Assembly (NCBI RefSeq): GCF_006345805.1
Contig: NC_043001.1
Coordinates: 93,186,001-93,250,000, forward strand
From: Octopus sinensis
Lineage: Eukaryota
Length of the DNA: 64,000 bases
Reading direction: 5' to 3'
Positions 1 to 62,917 of this stretch are shown here, one piece after another. The notes beneath the pieces were generated by a model. It made no database searches and was not told the DNA's origin. It worked only from the letters and a program-made list of their open reading frames with translations. Both the position numbers and the translations under genes were made by a program. The stretch's first letter is position 1; every line of letters begins with the position of its first letter.

Positions 1-278
1 TACATGCCGAAGACTACTTGGTGTAATTGATAATTATTCCAAATTAATTAATTTCACCCTTCATTATTACGGATAACCATATTTTATCTCAGTAGATGAC
101 CACAGCATCTTGTTTTGGCTGCACGCGGGTGGGAAGGGGCTGTTGACACAATCGTTTCATTCACAAATTTGAATTCGGTGATACTAGTTGAGGATTCTAG
201 CTCGCTCTGATACTGAGTTGAGTTGGTACCTCCTAGTATCTCAAAATTCAATATATAATCATTTATGATTATAGTATT

Positions 279-383
279 CCACGCTGAAGAGAAAAGAAGT
301 TTCGGTAAGATAGAATTATTTAATATTTAATATTTTAATTCTTATGCTTTCCTAAAACTTGATTTCGAAACGTACGTCCGTGG
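279..383 (+). ncRNA. Type I hammerhead ribozyme, copy 1 (predicted cleavage after C378)
   Basis: Stem I CCACG(279-283)/CGUGG(379-383); core CUGAAGA 284-290; stem II G291-C366, A292-U365, A293-U364, A294-U363, extending into a long hairpin; GAAA 367-370; stem III A-U, C-G with GUAC loop; GUC 376-378. Confidence 0.88.
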
Positions 384-878
384 ATAACTTTAAAATGTTT
401 GATAGATTGCGGTTAATTCATTCTCTCTACCTGTTTGTGTCAGCCTTCCAATTGCTGTTTTTACTGAGATCTCCCTTTTTAGTAGAAGAAATAGCTATAA
501 CCCTTTGACTGCTATTTCTAAAATCGGTATGTGGTAAGGCAATTCGTTGCTGAACCCTTATTGCTTAGTATTACTTAAATTTTCCTCAAATGAGGCTTTT
601 ACATGCCGAAGACTACTTGGTGGTAATTGATAATTATTCCAAATTAATTAATTTCACCCTTCATTATTACGGATAACCATATTTTATCTCAGTAGATGAC
701 CACAGCATCTTGTTTTGGCTGCACGCGGGTGGGAAGGGGCTGGTTGGCACAATCGTTTCATTCACAAATTTGAATTCGGTGATACTAGTTGAGGATTCTA
801 GCTCGCTCTGATACTGAGTTGAGTTGGTACCTCCTAGTATCTCAAAATTCAATATATAATCATTTATGATTATAGTAT

Positions 879-983
879 CCACGCTGAAGAGAAAAGAAGT
901 TTCGGTAAGATAGAATTATTTAATATTTAATATTTTAATTCTTATGCTTTCCTAAAACTTGATTTCGAAACGTACGTCCGTGG
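879..983 (+). ncRNA. Type I hammerhead ribozyme, copy 2 (cleavage after C978)
   Basis: Same CCACG-CUGAAGA...C-GAAAC-GUAC-GUC-CGUGG motif, core intact. Confidence 0.88.
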
Positions 984-1478
984 ATAACTTTAAAAATGTT
1001 TGATAGATTGCGGTTAATTCATTCTCTTTACCTGTTTGTGTCAGCCTTCCAATTGCTGTTTTTACTGAGATCTCCCTTTTTAGTAGAAGAAAAATAGCTA
1101 TAACCCTTGACTGCTATTTCTAAATTCGGTATGTGGTAAGGCATTCGTTGCTGAACCCTTATTGCTTAGTATTACTTAAATTTTCCTCAAATGAGGCTTT
1201 TACATGCCGAAGACTACTTGGTGTAATTGATAATTATTCCAAATTAATTAATTTCACCCTTCATTATTACGGATAACCATATTTTATCTCAGTAGATGAC
1301 CACAGCATCTTGTTTTGGCTGCACGCGGGTGGGAAGGGGCTGTTGACACAATCGTTTCATTCACAAATTTGAATTCGGTGATACTAGTTGAGGATTCTAG
1401 CTCGCTCTGATACTGAGTTGAGTTGGTACCTCCTAGTATCTCAAAATTCAATATATAATCATTATTGATTATAGTATT

Positions 1479-1583
1479 CCACGCTGAAGAGAAAAGAAGT
1501 TTCGGTAAGATAGAATTATTTAATATTTAATATTTTAATTCTTATGCTTTCCTAAAACTTGATTTCGAAACGTACGTCCGTGG
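1479..1583 (+). ncRNA. Type I hammerhead ribozyme, copy 3 (cleavage after C1578)
   Basis: Same motif, core intact. Confidence 0.88.
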
Positions 1584-2077
1584 ATAACTTTAAAAATGTT
1601 TGATAGATTGCGGTTAATTCATTCTCTCTTACCTGTTTGTGTCAGCCTTCCAATTGCTGTTTTTACTGAGATCTCCCTTTAGTAGTAGAAGAAATAGCTA
1701 TACCCTTTGACTGCTATTTCTAAATTCGGTATGTGGTAAGGCAATTCGTTGCTGAACCCTTATTGCTTAGTATTACTTAAATTTTCCTCAAATGAGGCTT
1801 TTACATGCCGAAGACTACTTGGTGTAATTGATAATTATTCCAAATTAATTAATTTCACCCTTCATTATTACGGATAACCATATTTTATCTCAGTAGATGA
1901 CCACAGCATCTGTTTTGGCTGCACGCGGGTGGGAAGGGGCTGTTGACACAATCGTTCATTCACAAATTTGAATTCGGTGATACTAGTTGAGGATTCTAGC
2001 TCGCTCTGATACTGAGTTGAGTTGGTACCTCCTAGTATCTCAAAATTCAATATATAATCATTTATGATTATAGTATT

Positions 2078-2182
2078 CCACGCTGAAGAGAAAAGAAGTT
2101 TCGGTAAGATAGAATTATTTAATATTTAATATTTTAATTCTTATGCTTTCCTAAAACTTGATTTCGAAACGTACGTCCGTGG
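2078..2182 (+). ncRNA. Type I hammerhead ribozyme, copy 4 (cleavage after C2177)
   Basis: Same motif, core intact. Confidence 0.88.
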
Positions 2183-2676
2183 ATAACTTTAAAAATGTTT
2201 GATAGATTGCGGTTAATTCATTCTCTCTTACCTGTTTGTGTCAGCCTTCCAATTGCTGTTTTTACTGAGATCTCCCTTTTTAGTAGAAGAAATAGCTATA
2301 ACCCTTTGACTGCTATTTCTAAATTCGGTATGTGGTAAGGCAATTCGTTGCTGAACCCTTATTGCTTAGTATTACTTAAATTTTCCTCAAATGAGGCTTT
2401 TACATGCCGAAGACTACTTGGTGTAATTGATAATTATTCCAAATTAATTAATTTCACCCTCTTATTACGGATAACCATATTTTATCTCAGTAGATGACCA
2501 CAGCATCTTGTTTTGGCTGCACGCGGGGGGGAAGGGGCTGTTGACACAATCGTTTCATTCACAAATTTGAATTCGGTGATACTAGTTGAGGATTCTAGCT
2601 CGCTCTGATACTGAGTTGAGTTGGTACCTCCTAGTATCTCAAAATTCAATATATAATCATTTATGATTATAGTATT

Positions 2677-2780
2677 CCACGCTGAAGAGAAAAGAAGTTT
2701 CGGTAAGATGAATTATTTAATATTTAATATTTTAATTCTTATGCTTTCCTAAAACTTGATTTCGAAACGTACGTCCGTGG
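2677..2780 (+). ncRNA. Type I hammerhead ribozyme, copy 5 (cleavage after C2775)
   Basis: Same motif, core intact; 1-nt deletion in distal stem II. Confidence 0.88.
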
Positions 2781-3086
2781 ATAACTTTAAAAATGTTTGA
2801 TAGATTGCGGTTAATTCATTCTCTCTTACCTGTTGTGTCAGCCTTCCAATTGCTGTTTTTACTGAGATCTCCCTTTTTAGTAGAAGAAATAGCTATAACC
2901 TTTGACTGCTATTTCTAAATTCGGTATGTGGTAAGGCAATTCGTTGCTGAACCCTTATTGCTTAGTATTACTTAAATTTTCCTCAAATGAGGCTTTTACA
3001 TGCCGAAGACTACTTGGTGTAATTGATAATTATTCCAAATTAATTAATTTCACCCTTCATTATTACGGATATATATATATATATAT

Positions 3087-3446
3087 CGTGGCACTCCGTC
3101 GTTTACGACGACGCAGGTTCCAGTTGATTTAATCAACAGAACAGCCTGCTCGTGAAGTTAACATGCAAGTGGCTGAGCACTTCATAGACACGCGTACCCT
3201 TAACATAATTCTCGGGGAGATTCAGCGTGACAAGACTGGCTCTTTGAAATACAGGTACAACAGAAACAGGATGAAAGAGTGAGAGAAAGTTGTGGTGAAA
3301 GAATACAGCCGGGTTCACCACGCCCCCCTGCTGGAGTCTCGTGGAGCTTTAGGTGTTTTCGCTCAATAAACATTGACAATGCTCGGTCTGGGAATCGGAA
3401 ACGCGATCCTATGACCTCGAGTCTGCTGCCCTAACCCCTGGGCCCT
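3087..3446 (-). mobile_element. tRNA-derived SINE adjacent to (AT)n
   Basis: Minus strand starts GGCCCAGGGGTTAGGGCAGCAGACTCGAGGTCATAGGATCGCG...CCGATTCCCAGACC (degenerate A/B boxes). The body (CGTGGCACTCCGTC...GAGTGAGAGAAAGTTGTGG) matches a common cephalopod repeat as I recall it. Confidence 0.7.
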
Positions 3447-3527
3447 TGCACCTCTACACACACACACACACGCACACACACTCATATATAATTATATATA
3501 AATATATATGTATTATATATAATTATG

Positions 3528-24927: not shown

Positions 24928-25508
24928 TTGGGTTGTCCGGAAAGCTCGTGCCGATTTATTGTAGCTTACCTTTCGACTTATTTTAGAACATGATTCAGTC
25001 CGTAAAATAGGATTTGACTACACCTCCATTTAGAGCATAGTTTAAGCTATCTTTTCGTGGAAGAAGGTTTCTGTTCCTATAACCTATGTTTATTCTGTAA
25101 CCCTTTAATTCTGTAACCTGGGAGATAAGAAAGTTCATTTTCGGCAGCTGATGCTTTTCTTTTTCCGTAAAGGGAAAAATGCCTCACGAGCAACCAAAGA
25201 AATATGCGCGGTTTACGGTGATGTTTCTTTATCCGAACGAACTGTACGGAAGTGGTTCGCAAGGTTCCGAACTGGAGATTTTAGCCTTGTTGATAAAGAG
25301 CGATCAGGCAGATCATCCACTACAGATGATGACCAAATCAAGTCATTAATTGAAAATAACCCGCATTGCACAATCCGAGAATTGGCAGAAACATCAACCT
25401 ATCAAAATCTGTCGTTCATGAGCACCTGGTAAAGCTTGGGTAATGGCAAGTACTTTTTGACCTTTTTCTTTCCTTTAAAAATCGGCACGAACTTTCCAGA
25501 CAACCCAA
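24928..25508 (+). mobile_element. Internally deleted mariner element with ~30-bp TIRs and TA target duplication
   Basis: 5' TA|TTGGGTTGTCCGGAAAGCTCGTGCCGATTT and 3' AAATCGGCACGAACTTTCCAGACAACCCAA|TA (2 mismatches). Confidence 0.95.
25151..25432 (+). pseudogene. Mariner transposase N-terminal HTH fragment; DDD domain deleted
   Basis: (VHFRQL)MLFFFRKGKNASRATKEICAVYGDVSLSERTVRKWFARFRTGDFSLVDKERSGR is a typical Mos1-like DNA-binding domain. Confidence 0.92.
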
Positions 25509-51849: not shown

Positions 51850-52055
51850 CCGCAGTTAATCCAAACATGAAAACACGAAGAGAAAACACAACAACCCGAG
51901 GTCATGGAACAAGTATAATGTTATTGGACGCTCAGGAAAGGAAAGAAAGAAGGAGGATTTAACGTCTCGAGCGGAGCTCTTCGTCAGAAACATAGAAAAA
52001 GGAAAGATCCAAGGAAGGGAAGACGGAGGAAAAAATTGCCAACGATACACACGCG
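51850..52055 (-). mobile_element. Penelope pLTR-like repeat with mutated minimal HHR (51957-51991)
   Basis: Minus: GUUU-CUGACGA-A-GAGC-UCC-GCUC-GAGAC-GUU-AAAU (GAAA changed to GAGA); homologous to 60305-60495. Confidence 0.7.
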
Positions 52056-57852: not shown

Positions 57853-57979
57853 CTCTGCTCAATGCAGACTTGAAAATGTTGGCCAAGGTGTTAGCCAAGA
57901 GGTTGGCGCTTGTCCTCGAGAAACTGGTCGACAAGGCGCAAACGTGCTCCGTGCCGGGCCGGAGCATCCATGACAACCT
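57853..57979 (+). repeat. Exact 127-bp copy of RT segment 58586-58712 inside a microsatellite
   Basis: CTCTGCTCAATGCAGAC...CCATGACAACCT is identical in both places. Confidence 0.95.
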
Positions 57980-58219
57980 ACCTATCTACTTCCCATCCTT
58001 CCTATCTATCTATCTACTAGCCTACTTACCTACCCTTTCCAGGCTCCTCCCTCCCTTCCTATCCAAACACCTACCTACTTACCTTCCTACCTATCTACAT
58101 ACCTACCTACCTACCTCCCTACCTACCTCCCTACCTACATACTACCTACCTACCCACCTAACTCCCTACCTACCTCCATATCTATCTATCAATCTATCTA
58201 TCTATCTATCTATCAATCA

Positions 58220-58897
58220 ATGTGTGAGGCCTTTCAACAGCATTTTGCCCGACTGTTCGGGACGAGTGGCGGGCGAGAACGCAGGGTGGACTTCAGTGCC
58301 TACCTACACAGCCTGTCACGACTCTCAACAAGAGAGGCAGGGCGCTGCGTAAGTGCAATCACGACGGGATGCGATAGCAGAATGCTCGAGGGACAAATCG
58401 GGTTTCGATGGTCTACCTACGAGTTTACAGCTGTATGCCAGACTTGTTTGGAGACGTCTTGGCGGCAGTGTACTGCAACTGCCAGCAAAACGGGAGCATC
58501 CCCGGTTTTGTTAGCCAAGGAGCCGTAACGCTACTGAAGAAAGATCCAAAACAAGGTGACGTACTAGATAACTTTAGGCCCATCACTCTGCTCAATGCAG
58601 ACTTGAAAATGTTGGCCAAGGTGTTAGCCAAGAGGTTGGCGCTTGTCCTCGAGAAACTGGTCGACAAGGCGCAAACGTGCTCCGTGCCGGGCCGGAGCAT
58701 CCATGACAACCTCCATCTAATGCGCTACATCATAGACAGGGTAGTTAAGGAACCTGGCATGGGTGGGGTCCTGATCAATTTGGATTAATCGAAAGCTTTC
58801 GATAGGGTACACCATCGATAATTGGAGGCTGTGCTCATAGCGGCTGCTTTCGGTCCCGTCTTTCGCGGCAGGATACCTGCTTTATACAGAGGCATCT
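58220..58897 (+). pseudogene. L1/Tx1-clade reverse transcriptase fragment (inactivated)
   Basis: [23 protein letters not shown]...[14 protein letters not shown]...INLD*SKAFDRVHH; early non-LTR RT subdomains with stops and frameshifts. Confidence 0.93.
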
Positions 58898-59986: not shown

Positions 59987-60020
<34 letters not shown>

Positions 60021-60023
60021 TAT

Positions 60024-60140
60024 GTAGAAGACCGTAGGCTCAAAACGTAAAAGACTTTTTCTATTCCTGAGCGTTATACTAATACATCTGTTTGTTTTGT
60101 ACAGCACCTATCGTCATCGTTTGTTTTTTCGTAAACTCTA

Positions 60141-60304: not shown

Positions 60305-60495
60305 AAATGTAACCACGTGCGTATCGTTGGCGATTTTCTTCTTCCGCCTTCCCTTCTTTTGGACTTTCCTCTATTTCTGAAGAAGAGCTTTGCTCGAAAC
60401 GTAAGATTTTCTTTCATTCCTTTCCTGAGCGTCTGATAATACAGTACTTGTACTACGTCCTTATATTGTTGTGTTTTCTTATTTGTTATTTCTTC
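60305..60495 (+). mobile_element. Penelope pLTR-like repeat with minimal HHR (60373-60407)
   Basis: AUUU-CUGAAGA-A-GAGC-UUU-GCUC-GAAAC-GUA-AGAU; loopless palindromic ACGU stem III. Confidence 0.72.
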
Positions 60496-61061
60496 TTTGT
60501 ATATATATAATATATAATATATATATATATTATATATATATATATATATACACGGATAATGCTATGTACGTACAATTATTTCGATAGATATATAGACAGG
60601 CAGACAAACAGATACATCGATAGATAAGCTGGCAGGCATTTTAAAAATCAATGCACGAATCTAAAGGTTATGTGTTCAGATCTTAACGAAGCCAATTAAT
60701 ATTGTACTGTACGAAAATATTTTGTATGAAAATATAATCCATATAAAACGTAGAAATTTCTCTGTGTATATATATATATATCAAATATTTGCATGTATAC
60801 GTCTATATGTTTATGAGTTCGTGTCTGTATGTGTGGGGTGGCTTGTGTCTTTGTATAAATATCTGTGTGTATATGGTGTGCAATGTCAGAGAATTTGGAA
60901 GGCTGCATCAATAAAAGTGAGAGTGAATATGATGTATCGATTATTCTCTTCTGTGCAACATACAAAGATTATTTATACGTACTATATACATATGCATGTC
61001 TGTCTCAGTCTCTGCACTTTTGTGTGTATGAATAAATAAGAATATACCAATATATGTAAGC

Positions 61062-61640: not shown

Positions 61641-62765
61641 ACGATGGTGTTTCTTCCTTCCCCCTTTCTTTCGTTTAGAAAATCAGACACATGCAAAGCA
61701 GCATAATTTCTTCCACAGTCTTTTATTCAAGTTTTGGACAATATATACTGCGATATCCGCTGTCGTTCCAAGTTCGTTGACATCCGTCTAATGAGTAGCT
61801 TAAACGGTGATTATCTCACCGCATCACTTACTTGATATGACTAAATCTTTATCTGGCAGCATCACTCGAAATACTGATTAACCAATTAAACCAATGTTGT
61901 GATTCTTACATCAGTTTATAGCCGATGATTGAATACTTCAGTGATCTCATTTTCATAAAGTTCAAACCTCACTCATGCCACTTAATACATCAGTATAATC
62001 TTAGATACTCTCTACTCACAGCCCGTTCCCGCTATTTTCTGAGGTTGACTATTTTAATTGCTCAAACGATTAAAGGAGGCAAACAGCAGATTATAATTAG
62101 AATACACACGCATACACACATTCATATACGCATATGTATGTAGTATTATTTATTACCTATTACATATGTTTCATTACCTAATAGGAGTTACTGGTATGCA
62201 TATAAAATAAACATGTAAGATATAACCATTAGTGATTCTCTAATATATATATATATATTTATATATGAGGATAATATCGATATTTAAGTGTCGAAATTAT
62301 CAAGTGGCCAGCATGAAAGAAATACCTTACAAAGGTAAAAAAATTTTTAACAATTAAAAATGAGGGTGTCTATATAAATTTATATAATTCGTTATTATAT
62401 TCACTGCGGTGCTTATTTTAACCATGTCGTACTTATGCGGTGATTTGGCGGGCGATTCAGACTGGCTGTGTCCATACGTGCATATGTATGTATGTACGAC
62501 GCTCGTATATGTAAGTATATCGTTTGCTGTGCATATATATATCTGTATTTATGTACCCTTGATATATTCAATTGATGACGGTAAAGCTTATCTAAAGCAG
62601 AACCAGAAATCCTTGGATCTTGAATTATTCAATAATTTTTGCTTGTATGTTTTGTCCCTCCGCTTTACCTCATGGTGCGATATGAACATTTAACGTGGTA
62701 CTATAGTCAGTGTTTCGACTGCTATTTCGGCATGTTGGTGTCTTTTAGACACCCTCATTTTTAAT

Positions 62766-62797
<32 letters not shown>

Positions 62798-62798
<1 letters not shown>

Positions 62799-62917
62799 CA
62801 CGTGATCACGTGACCGACCAGATAATCAGATGTTGTTACACATCGCTGGTCACAATGCGTTCGCATTGTTTTAGCCTTCGAATGACGCAACCCCGCTGGC
62901 TAAGCGAGCAGACCAAT

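What the first reader, a model, noticed from the sequence alone, without database searches (positions are those of the whole stretch)
1..3070. Tandem ~600-bp array in which every unit encodes an intact type I hammerhead ribozyme: candidate cephalopod retrozyme / circRNA system
Seen: five near-identical units, each with CCACG-CUGAAGA-[stem II]-GAAA-C-GUAC-GUC-CGUGG and all catalytic core nucleotides intact. Predicted cleavage after 378, 978, 1578, 2177 and 2775 would give monomers of 600, 600, 599 and 598 nt. Known: metazoan retrozymes, newt satellite 2 and Schistosoma SM-alpha are tandem repeats with type I HHRs whose transcripts self-cleave to monomers that can circularise, and Penelope-like elements carry such HHRs in their pLTRs. 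Inferred: this is a non-autonomous, non-coding self-processing element, longer than the few-hundred-nt animal retrozymes I know of, probably mobilised by a Penelope-type RT. It ends in an (AT)n tract. I cannot confirm whether it has been described.
Basis: partly seen in the sequence, partly recalled or inferred. Interest (0 to 1): 0.93.

Follow-up and report, generated by a model that had tools for sequence, protein, structure and literature searches.

The report
Tandem 600-bp repeat carrying hammerhead ribozymes
The first 3 kb of the window is a head-to-tail array of a 600-bp non-coding repeat, and every unit carries a complete type I hammerhead self-cleaving RNA motif; this is most likely an ordinary member of the known animal "retrozyme" class, unusual only in having one very long ribozyme arm.

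Summary
Window 1-3069 is a tandem array (period 598-601 bp, about 99% identity, 5.1 units, cut by the window start). It has five exact copies of CCACG-CUGAAGA-[76 nt]-GAAA-CGUACG-UC|CGUGG, on the + strand only, and the predicted monomers are 600/600/599/598 nt.

Every hammerhead core position is canonical. Helix I runs 6 bp to an internal loop, helix II 4 bp to an internal loop, and helix III is 2 bp inside an 8-nt palindrome. That is the standard metazoan type I layout, except that loop 2 is replaced by a roughly 60-nt hairpin extension. This extension keeps Rfam Hammerhead_1 below its gathering score (21.6 vs 34 bits, E=0.003 in a local scan).

Folding predicts:
- helices I and II with probability of about 0.9 or more in the circular monomer;
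- a strongly structured 600-nt RNA (z = -5.7);
- a double hammerhead as the minimum-energy fold of a two-unit transcript.

The unit is non-coding, 34% GC, and the array ends at an (AT)9 tract.

Best reading: a non-LTR retrozyme or hammerhead satellite. This is a new member of a known kind. The 600-bp length is not exceptional, since published families span 51-972 bp. Cephalopod origin, Penelope-like mobilisation, expression and cleavage remain untested, and no relatives could be retrieved.

The parts
1..3069 (+). Tandem array of a ~600-bp non-coding unit: 4 complete units plus 2 partial ones. It is cut by the window start, so the true length and left junction are unknown.
278..384 (+). Hammerhead copy 1: helix I UCCACG/CGUGGA, core CUGAAGA 284-290, helix II 291-366, GAAA 367-370, palindrome ACGUACGU 370-377, cleavage after C378.
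876..986 (+). Hammerhead copy 2, cleavage after C978. A 1-nt deletion upstream of CCACG makes helix I 8 continuous bp.
1478..1584 (+). Hammerhead copy 3, cleavage after C1578. This copy was scanned against Rfam: RF00163, 21.6 bits, E=0.0029, model positions 1-45, with a 72-nt insertion in helix II.
2077..2183 (+). Hammerhead copy 4, cleavage after C2177. In the 1460-2200 transcript its palindrome 2169-2176 pairs with 1570-1577 of copy 3 (double hammerhead).
2676..2781 (+). Hammerhead copy 5, cleavage after C2775. A 1-nt deletion in the distal part of helix II leaves it 75 nt long.
1491..1566 (+). Helix II of copy 3 (the same in all copies): 4 bp (GAAA/UUUC), a 2x2 purine internal loop (AG/GA), 6 bp, then an AU-rich imperfect hairpin. 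It is 76 nt long where the Rfam model has about 14.
1579..2177 (+). One predicted self-cleaved monomer (599 nt), the unit of the proposed linear or circular RNA. For the 600-nt consensus: circular MFE -159.5 kcal/mol, z = -5.7, 64% of bases paired.
3069..3086 (.). (AT)9 microsatellite abutting the 3' end of the array. The junction falls at unit position ~297, not at the cleavage site.
60373..60407 (+). Context only: an unrelated 'minimal' type I hammerhead of the kind described for Penelope-like elements. It lies inside a ~190-bp short repeat at 60316-60500.
51862..52053 (-). Context only: a 75%-identical decayed copy of the short repeat at 60316-60500. Its hammerhead core carries A14G.

Best explanation
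This is a non-LTR retrozyme, equivalently a hammerhead-bearing satellite of the newt satellite 2 / Schistosoma Sm-alpha kind. It is a non-coding 600-bp unit, tandemly repeated, whose + strand transcript carries one type I hammerhead per unit.

Proposed mechanism:
1. Shown: the sequence has a fully canonical core, three helices and tandem phasing.
2. Predicted by folding: in a multimeric transcript two neighbouring hammerheads pair through their 8-nt palindrome ACGUACGU. [quoted passage not shown]
3. Predicted by folding: a lone monomer has a helix III too weak to form (pair probability about 0.04), so monomers are protected from re-cleavage.
4. Inferred from the published family: a host tRNA-ligase-type enzyme circularises the monomer into a highly base-paired circle.
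5. Inferred: a reverse transcriptase supplied in trans, with a Penelope-like element as the leading candidate, copies the circle by rolling circle. It primes at a nicked (TA)n target and so produces a tandem cDNA array whose end falls at an arbitrary phase of the unit, as seen at 3069.
For: - Core and phasing. There are five exact in-phase motifs with every core position canonical: C3-A9 = CUGAAGA, G12A13A14, A15.1-U16.1, C17, and the G10.1-C11.1 and C1.1-G2.1 pairs. Hits occur only in the array and only on the + strand, against 0.02 expected per shuffled window.
- Rfam. Hammerhead_1 aligns over the whole model (positions 1-45) with E=0.0029 when the motif is scanned alone. The Rfam consensus helix III 'ACGcgCGU' matches 'ACGUACGU' here.
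- Geometry. Helix I is 6 bp then an internal loop, helix II is 4 bp then an internal loop, and helix III is 2 bp with a palindromic tetraloop. This is the 'canonical metazoan type I' layout in PMC4209133.
- Monomer fold. The hammerhead fold lies within 1.1 kcal/mol of the MFE. In the circular monomer, helix I pairs have probability 0.89-1.0, helix II 0.94-0.99 and helix III 0.04.
- Dimer fold. Two copies co-fold into the double hammerhead, -57.2 vs 2 x -22.4 kcal/mol. The MFE of the natural 741-nt two-hammerhead transcript is that same structure, 4.8 kcal/mol better than with the palindromes unpaired.
- Overall structure. The circular monomer has z = -5.7 with 0 of 200 shuffles as stable; the minus strand gives z = -3.5; control segments lie mostly between -1.7 and +1.8.
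- Non-coding. The longest open frame is 80 aa, is not kept between units and has no homologue.
- Family traits. GC is 34%. Low GC, tandem type I hammerheads, lack of coding capacity and self-paired circles that leave the hammerhead free are the stated traits of metazoan retrozymes (PMC7229834).
- Junction. The array's 3' end abuts (AT)9, and (TA)n is a documented preferred target of PLEs (PMC8557442).
- Context. PLE-type minimal hammerhead elements lie next to (TA)n tracts in the same window.
Against: - Rfam gives no hit at the gathering threshold or at E<=10 on 3.2 kb. The local hit, at 21.6 bits, is below the 34-bit cut-off.
- No relatives were found in any searchable collection, so there is no covariation test and no evidence of more than one locus.
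- No other copy lies in the remaining 61 kb.
- No PLE RT or GIY-YIG ORF is in the window. The only RT fragment looks LINE-like.
- The left end of the array lies outside the window, so target-site duplication and the insertion mode cannot be read.
- (AT)>=6 tracts cover 3% of the window, so ending in one has p of about 0.03 by chance.
- Among the nine substitutions between units, 4 of the 6 at predicted paired sites break the pair. There is no sign of selection on structure within the array, although the copies are too young for this to be informative.
- There are no expression, cleavage or circularity data.
- The 60-nt extension replaces loop 2, so the usual loop1-loop2 tertiary contact cannot be confirmed.
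Confidence: 0.7

Rival explanations
1. This is a hammerhead-bearing satellite DNA amplified purely at the DNA level, by unequal crossing-over or replication slippage. Its transcripts may self-cleave, but there is no reverse transcription and no mobility.
For: Only one locus is seen in 64 kb. The units are about 99% identical, as expected from recent local homogenisation. No RT partner is nearby. No relatives were found elsewhere.
Against: The array ends at an arbitrary phase of the unit exactly at an (AT)n tract. That fits target-primed rolling-circle cDNA synthesis better than unequal exchange. Published work reinterprets such hammerhead satellites, including newt satellite 2, as retrozymes (PMC7229834). 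The tools used cannot see eukaryotic genomes, so 'one locus' is not a real measurement.
Confidence: 0.13
2. This is a tandem remnant of the pseudo-LTR of an autonomous Penelope-like element that has lost its ORF, rather than a dedicated non-autonomous family.
For: PLE pseudo-LTRs carry type I hammerheads, occur in partial tandems and favour (TA)n targets (PMC4209133, PMC8557442). A 2026 preprint finds that vertebrate retrozymes are sister to PLE pLTRs (10.64898/2026.07.22.740005).
Against: At least five ORF-less units lie in a row, with no RT/GIY-YIG trace in the array or the window. The hammerhead here has the canonical 6-bp/4-bp/2-bp layout rather than the 'minimal' PLE form, which does occur separately at 60373-60407. 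In practice this rival merges with the best explanation, since retrozymes are regarded as PLE derivatives.
Confidence: 0.08
3. This is a chance or decayed hammerhead-like motif in an ordinary tandem repeat. The RNA, if made at all, does not self-cleave.
For: The motif is below Rfam's gathering score. The 123-nt motif region alone folds only marginally better than shuffles, z = -1.33. Helix II is far longer than in any model. A permissive descriptor would produce hundreds of chance hits in a Gb-scale genome. Perreault et al. warn that consensus matches arise by chance in large databases (PMC3088659).
Against: The chance expectation is about 2e-4 per 600-bp unit. On top of that, none of the following was required by the descriptor: a zero-deviation core, the G10.1-C11.1 pair, the canonical 6/4/2 helix geometry, an 8-nt palindrome at helix III, a double hammerhead as the MFE of the natural dimer, a full-length Rfam alignment, and z = -5.7 for the whole unit.
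Confidence: 0.05
4. The copy number is an assembly artefact. One or two real units were expanded by a long-read assembler, so there is no real array.
For: Most differences between units are homopolymer-length indels, typical of long-read consensus error. The array also sits at the very start of the window.
Against: Units also differ by about 9 true substitutions, each private to one unit, which a simple loop expansion would not create. This rival does not bear on the reality of the hammerhead.
Confidence: 0.04

Closest known systems
Metazoan non-LTR retrozymes (Cervera and de la Pena 2020, PMC7229834; Li, Clavereau and Pollet 2026 preprint 10.64898/2026.07.22.740005)
   Same: Both are head-to-tail tandem repeats with one type I hammerhead per unit. 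Both have low GC (34% here, <45-50% published), no ORF and no LTR, PBS or PPT. The predicted circle is highly self-paired and leaves the hammerhead free to fold. The unit length lies within the published range of 51-972 bp.
   Different: Helix II is 76 nt, with loop 2 replaced by an internal loop plus a long hairpin, so the motif escapes Rfam's threshold. Expression, circularity and multi-locus distribution are not shown here. The host taxon is unverified, and I found no paper describing cephalopod retrozymes.
Newt/salamander satellite 2 and axolotl HHR_Amex1/2 repeats, which act as dimeric 'double hammerheads' (Forster et al. 1988, as cited in PMC4209133 and PMC7229834)
   Same: Helix III is very short and capped by a palindromic loop. 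The monomer is predicted to be inactive, and two tandem copies form an extended intermolecular helix III. Here that helix is 8 bp and the double hammerhead is the MFE of the dimer transcript.
   Different: The unit is 600 bp rather than about 330-350 bp. Helix III is 2 bp plus a tetraloop, as in Amex2 and invertebrate motifs, rather than 1 bp. Helix II is long. There is no sequence similarity.
Rfam RF00163 Hammerhead_1
   Same: The alignment covers the full model. All core nucleotides, the 6-bp helix I and the ACG..CGU helix III match the consensus.
   Different: The score is 21.6 bits against a gathering score of 34, because 72 nt are inserted where the model has 10 positions. The motif is not reported in normal annotation runs.
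Minimal hammerheads of Penelope-like elements (Cervera and de la Pena 2014, PMC4209133)
   Same: Both are type I, with a palindromic helix III region, a presumed dimeric mode of action and an association with (TA)n-targeting retroelements.
   Different: PLE minimal hammerheads lack a real helix III and loop-loop geometry, usually have an extra nucleotide before G10.1, and sit in pseudo-LTRs flanking an RT/GIY-YIG ORF. None of that applies to the array. A motif of that minimal kind does occur separately at 60373-60407.
Plant LTR retrozymes and viroid-like / HDV-like circular RNAs
   Same: All give rise to self-cleaved, circularisable non-coding RNAs of several hundred nt.
   Different: Plant retrozymes have type III hammerheads, LTRs, PBS and PPT, and GC >55%. 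Viroid-like agents carry ribozymes in both polarities. Here there is a type I motif on one strand only, encoded in genomic DNA.

Membership tests
Hammerhead ribozyme, type I | Conserved catalytic core: C3 U4 G5 A6 N7 G8 A9, G12 A13 A14, the A15.1-U16.1 pair, and H17 (not G) before the cleavage site | tested here: met
   CUGAAGA ... GAA-A...U-C is present in all five copies with no deviation.
Hammerhead ribozyme, type I | Three helices around the core with helix I open-ended, and a G10.1-C11.1 closing pair of helix II | tested here: met
   Helices I and II appear in the unconstrained MFE. The full hammerhead fold is within 1.1 kcal/mol of the MFE. Pair probabilities are 0.89-1.0 (helix I) and 0.94-0.99 (helix II) in the 600-nt circle.
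Hammerhead ribozyme, type I | Score at or above the curated Rfam RF00163 gathering threshold (34 bits) | tested here: not met
   There is no hit at the gathering threshold on the window or at E<=10 on 1-3200. Scanning 1465-1600 alone gives 21.6 bits, E=0.0029, with a 72-nt insertion in helix II.
Hammerhead ribozyme, type I | Tertiary contact between loop 1 (in helix I) and loop 2 (capping helix II) | tested here: inconclusive
   Internal loops sit at the canonical distances, 6 bp up helix I and 4 bp up helix II. However, loop 2 is an AG/GA internal loop and not a hairpin loop, and the contact nucleotides cannot be assigned from sequence.
Hammerhead ribozyme, type I | Compensatory base changes in the helices across relatives | not testable with these tools
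   No relatives could be retrieved. The five copies are identical in the motif apart from two 1-nt deletions.
Hammerhead ribozyme, type I | Site-specific, Mg2+-dependent self-cleavage | not testable with these tools
   This needs in vitro transcription of monomer and dimer constructs.
Metazoan non-LTR retrozyme | Head-to-tail tandem repeats (dimer to multimer), each unit with one type I hammerhead in the same phase | tested here: met
   There are 5.1 units and five in-phase motifs.
Metazoan non-LTR retrozyme | Unit size within the family's range, low GC, and no ORF, LTR, PBS or PPT | tested here: met
   The unit is 600 bp, against published ranges of 51-972 bp (10.64898/2026.07.22.740005) and 150 to >1000 nt (PMC7229834). 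GC is 0.343. The longest frame is 80 aa, is not conserved between units and has no homologue. There is no internal duplication.
Metazoan non-LTR retrozyme | The monomer RNA folds into a stable, highly self-paired structure | tested here: met
   The circular MFE is -159.5 vs -119.9 +/- 6.9 for shuffles, giving z = -5.7, with 64% of bases paired.
Metazoan non-LTR retrozyme | Expressed as linear and circular monomeric RNA | not testable with these tools
   No transcriptome of the (unidentified) source organism is available.
Metazoan non-LTR retrozyme | Dispersed in many loci (mobility) and co-occurring with autonomous Penelope-like elements | tested here: inconclusive
   There is a single locus in 64 kb and no PLE ORF in the window. 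Short repeats carrying PLE-type minimal hammerheads are present at 60316-60500 and 51862-52053.
Autonomous Penelope-like element | An ORF with an RT and a GIY-YIG endonuclease between pseudo-LTRs | tested here: not met
   There is no ORF >80 aa in the array. A Pfam scan of ten candidate frames found only Mos1 HTH_48 and one RVT_1 N-terminal fragment 55 kb away.
Viroid-like / HDV-like circular RNA agents | Ribozymes in both polarities, or a replicating RNA not encoded in host DNA | tested here: not met
   The motif is on the + strand only. There are no other ribozyme families in 1-3200 and no match in viral contigs.

The most novel reading that the evidence does not exclude
The element may represent a lineage of type I hammerheads in which loop 2 has been replaced by an internal loop plus a roughly 60-nt hairpin. 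The canonical 6-bp/4-bp spacing would be kept, and with it a different structural solution for the helix I-helix II contact. Such motifs fall below Rfam's threshold (21.6 vs 34 bits), so a whole population of long-helix-II hammerheads and their 600-nt circular RNAs could be missed systematically by standard genome annotation of the source lineage. That lineage may be cephalopods, where no retrozyme has been described in the literature I could search.
Probability: 0.3. Interest if true: 0.5.

Novelty: new member of a known kind. Interest (0 to 1): 0.33.

Why it matters
If confirmed, this adds one more animal lineage to the list of genomes encoding ribozyme-processed circular RNAs. It would also provide a natural hammerhead with a very long helix II, useful as a test case for how much the helix I-helix II contact can be rebuilt.

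The practical lesson is for annotation. Rfam's Hammerhead_1 at its gathering score does not see this motif, so counts of hammerheads in such genomes are underestimates (for example, the 235 reported for the giant squid, PMC6962438). The find does not open a new question, because tandem type I hammerhead repeats are already documented across most animal phyla.

Tried and rejected
- Rfam at the gathering score and at E<=10 on 3.2 kb gave no hammerhead. Only a scan restricted to 136 nt recovered RF00163.
- Searches for relatives all failed. An exact-pattern scan of JGI metagenome contigs with the whole motif gave 0. A pattern free of helix I gave 0 in metagenomes and 0 in viral contigs. A protein search with the longest open frame of the unit (80 aa) found no candidate.
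- Organism identification failed. A protein search with the LINE RT fragment gave two unnamed hits. Exact look-ups of two window ORFs found nothing on record. ARAGORN found no tRNA or tRNA-like SINE head.
- My guess that 3087-3460 is a tRNA-derived SINE got no support. Rfam gave no tRNA hit and there is no second copy in the window.
- I considered whether the 600-bp unit is a dimer of a 300-bp unit. No internal direct similarity was found, so I rejected this.
- I considered Pol III transcription. It is unlikely for multimers, since the + strand has seven runs of T>=4 per unit. A TATATAA box lies at unit position 474, about 25 nt upstream of the hammerhead. I leave this as speculation.
- I looked for structure-preserving substitutions among units. 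There are only nine substitutions and no bias, so this is uninformative.
- One folding control had an extreme z of -9.1 (62301-62900). It is explained by (AT)n tracts pairing with each other and is not a structured RNA.
Full report
**1. The observation**

Window 1-3069 is a tandem array.
- Direct-repeat families are spaced 596-601 bp apart.
They differ pairwise by 3-7 substitutions and 7-9 indel columns.
- BLAST of the consensus covers 1-3071 at 98.8-100% identity and finds no other copy in the remaining 61 kb.
- The array starts mid-unit at the window edge (unit position 223), so its real length and left junction are unknown.
- It ends at unit position ~297, directly against (AT)9 at 3069-3086.

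The string CCACG-CTGAAGA-[76 nt]-GAAA-CGTACG-TC-CGTGG occurs five times, at 279-383, 879-983, 1479-1583, 2078-2182 and 2677-2780. It is on the + strand only, and copy 5 has 75 nt in the bracket.

**2. Is it more than chance?**

I wrote a permissive type I descriptor: helix I >=5 bp, CUGANGA, helix II >=4 bp and up to 130 nt, GAAA, helix III >=2 bp, UH. It finds five hits in the window, all in the array. It finds 0.02 hits per dinucleotide-shuffled window over both strands, which is about 2e-4 for one 600-bp unit.

That figure alone would still allow hundreds of chance hits in a Gb-scale genome, and the five copies are a single event. The case therefore rests on features the descriptor did not demand:
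- The core has zero deviations: CUGAAGA, GAA, A15.1-U16.1, a GUC triplet, G10.1-C11.1 and C1.1-G2.1.
- Helix I is 6 bp followed by a 2x2 internal loop and 3 more pairs. Helix II is 4 bp followed by a 2x2 purine internal loop. Helix III is 2 bp with a GUAC loop, the whole forming the 8-nt palindrome ACGUACGU. PMC4209133 describes canonical metazoan type I hammerheads as exactly this: helix I 6 bp, helix II 4 bp, helix III 1-2 bp capped by a small palindromic loop.
- The motif is in phase with a tandem repeat, which is what gives a hammerhead a job.

**3. Rfam**

At the gathering threshold nothing is reported, and nothing at E<=10 on 1-3200. When only 1465-1600 is scanned, RF00163 Hammerhead_1 aligns over its whole length (positions 1-45) with 21.6 bits and E=0.0029. 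The gathering score is 34 bits. The alignment shows 72 nt inserted where the model has 10 helix II positions, and every other column agrees, including the model's ACGcgCGU helix III. The curated-threshold test is therefore formally not met, for an identifiable reason: a 76-nt helix II.

**4. Folding**

*Motif and monomer.*
- The 123-nt motif region folds into helices I and II without constraints. Its z-score is only -1.33.
- The fully constrained hammerhead is 1.1 kcal/mol above the MFE.
- The 600-nt consensus folded as a circle has an MFE of -159.5 kcal/mol, against -119.9 +/- 6.9 for 200 dinucleotide shuffles. That gives z = -5.7, with none of the shuffles as stable. 64% of bases are paired and GC is 34%.
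- The minus strand gives z = -3.5. Of 24 control segments from the same window, most lie between -1.7 and +1.8. The extreme control is explained by (AT)n tracts pairing with each other.
- In the circle, helix I pairs have probabilities of 0.89-1.0, helix II 0.94-0.99 and helix III only 0.04. The rest of the molecule is an extension of helix I. The hammerhead remains free to fold, as reported for most metazoan retrozyme circles (PMC7229834).

*Dimer.*
- Two motif copies co-fold into a domain-swapped double hammerhead with an 8-bp intermolecular helix III. The energy is -57.2 vs 2 x -22.4 kcal/mol.
- The unconstrained MFE of the natural two-hammerhead transcript 1460-2200 is that same structure. 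Bases 1570-1577 pair with 2169-2176, 1579-1583 with 2078-2082, and 1479-1483 with 2178-2182. It is 4.8 kcal/mol better than when the palindromes are kept unpaired.
- This is the behaviour known for newt and axolotl repeats, which cleave poorly as monomers and well as dimers (PMC7229834, PMC4209133).

**5. What it is not**

- It does not code. The longest open frame is 80 aa on the minus strand. It is not preserved between units and has no homologue among 5.8 billion proteins.
- It is not a dimer of a shorter unit.
- It has no ribozyme on the minus strand and no other Rfam family.
- It has no match in viral contigs.
- It is not an autonomous Penelope-like element. The array and window contain no RT/GIY-YIG ORF. 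A Pfam scan of ten candidate frames found only a Mos1-type HTH at 25109-25429 and an RVT_1 N-terminal fragment at 58378-58785, which looks LINE-like.

**6. Mechanism proposed**

The sequence anatomy is shown. The double-hammerhead switch is predicted by folding: cleavage occurs in multimers, and the monomer is protected because its own helix III does not form.

The remaining steps are inferred from the published family model (PMC7229834, PMC7761336). These are circularisation by a host RNA ligase, then rolling-circle reverse transcription by an RT supplied in trans, which yields tandem cDNA.

Two local observations fit that last step.
- The array ends at an arbitrary phase of the unit (position ~297) exactly at an (AT)9 tract, and (TA)n is a documented preferred target of PLEs (PMC8557442). 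However, (AT)>=6 tracts cover 3% of this window, so the coincidence is worth only p of about 0.03.
- The window contains an unrelated short repeat at 60316-60500 (+), with a 75%-identical decayed copy at 51862-52053 (-) and a degenerate copy near 60020-60140. It carries a 'minimal' type I hammerhead at 60373-60407 with the hallmarks given for PLE hammerheads: an extra nucleotide before G10.1, the G10.1-C11.1 pair, and an ACGU palindrome in place of helix III. It scored 0 hits in 200 shuffles, and its 3' ends lie at or near (TA)n tracts. This suggests PLE-type elements have been active in this genome. It does not link them to the 600-bp unit.

**7. Comparison with what is known**

The element meets every sequence-level criterion of metazoan non-LTR retrozymes. 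The criteria that need RNA or whole-genome data are untested.

A 2026 preprint reports consensus lengths of 51-972 bp, averaging 650 bp in ray-finned fish (10.64898/2026.07.22.740005). The 2020 paper mentions circles from 150 to >1000 nt.

What is unusual is helix II. In the papers I read I found no description of a natural type I hammerhead whose loop 2 is replaced by an internal loop and a roughly 60-nt hairpin (PMC3088659, PMC4209133, PMC7229834). That is absence of evidence in a limited search.

The 'cephalopod' attribution could not be tested. The window is AT-rich (34.9% GC) and extremely microsatellite-dense, and it carries mariner and LINE remnants. It is plainly an animal-type genome, but no tool returned a named relative. 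I found no paper on cephalopod retrozymes. The giant squid genome paper lists 235 Rfam Hammerhead_1 hits without further analysis (PMC6962438).

**8. Verdict**

This is a new member of a known kind, with one structural peculiarity, the long helix II, that makes it invisible to routine annotation. Interest is 0.33.

My probability for the retrozyme-type reading as a whole is about 0.7. Within it I give about 0.6 to double-hammerhead cleavage, about 0.5 to a circular RNA and about 0.4 to PLE mobilisation.

Noticed in passing
window 60373-60407 (+), within the repeat 60316-60500; related copies at 51862-52053 (-) and ~60020-60140 (+): A second, unrelated hammerhead-like motif of the 'minimal' Penelope-like-element type: AUUU-CUGAAGA-A-GAGC(UUU)GCUC-GAA-ACGU-A|AGAU. 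It lies inside a ~190-bp short interspersed repeat. It scored 0 hits in 200 shuffles with my descriptor, and Rfam gives no hit. The 51.9-kb copy keeps helix II (loop UUU->UCC) but has A14G. The copies' 3' ends lie at or near (TA)n tracts.
   Followed up: partly
window 876-986 and 2676-2781: Two hammerhead copies carry private 1-nt deletions. In copy 2, loss of a U removes the helix I internal loop and gives 8 continuous bp. In copy 5, loss of an A shortens the distal part of helix II to 75 nt. Either could be a long-read homopolymer error rather than a real variant.
   Followed up: partly
window 3087-3460: A distinct block directly follows the (AT)9 tract. It begins CGTGG, the same five bases that start the predicted monomer, probably by coincidence. 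On the minus strand it contains a B-box-like GTTTCCGATTCCC near 3400. I suspected a tRNA-derived SINE, but ARAGORN and Rfam give no tRNA hit and there is no second copy in the window.
   Followed up: partly
window 25109-25429 (+): Remnant of a mariner/Mos1-type transposase N-terminus (Pfam HTH_48, E=1.9e-21).
   Followed up: partly
window 57870-58010 and 58378-58785 (+): A LINE-like reverse transcriptase N-terminal fragment (RVT_1, E=7.7e-8). A stretch of about 40 aa ([37 protein letters not shown]) occurs twice about 700 bp apart, separated by tetranucleotide microsatellite. This is a local duplication or two truncated copies.
   Followed up: no
whole window: Microsatellite density is extreme. 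TRF reports more than 166 rows, and there are 83 (AT)>=6 tracts covering 3% of the window, plus many (TATC)n, (TCTA)n, (AC)n and (GA)n arrays. Window GC is 34.9%. (AT)n tracts pairing with each other give spurious folding z-scores, for example z = -9.1 for 62301-62900.
   Followed up: partly
unit position 474-480 (e.g. window 252-258, 1452-1458): A TATATAA box lies inside a 20-nt near-perfect palindrome (UAUAAUCAUUUAUGAUUAUA) about 25 nt upstream of each hammerhead. With seven T>=4 runs per unit arguing against Pol III, this may be a Pol II promoter element repeated in every unit. This is pure speculation.
   Followed up: no
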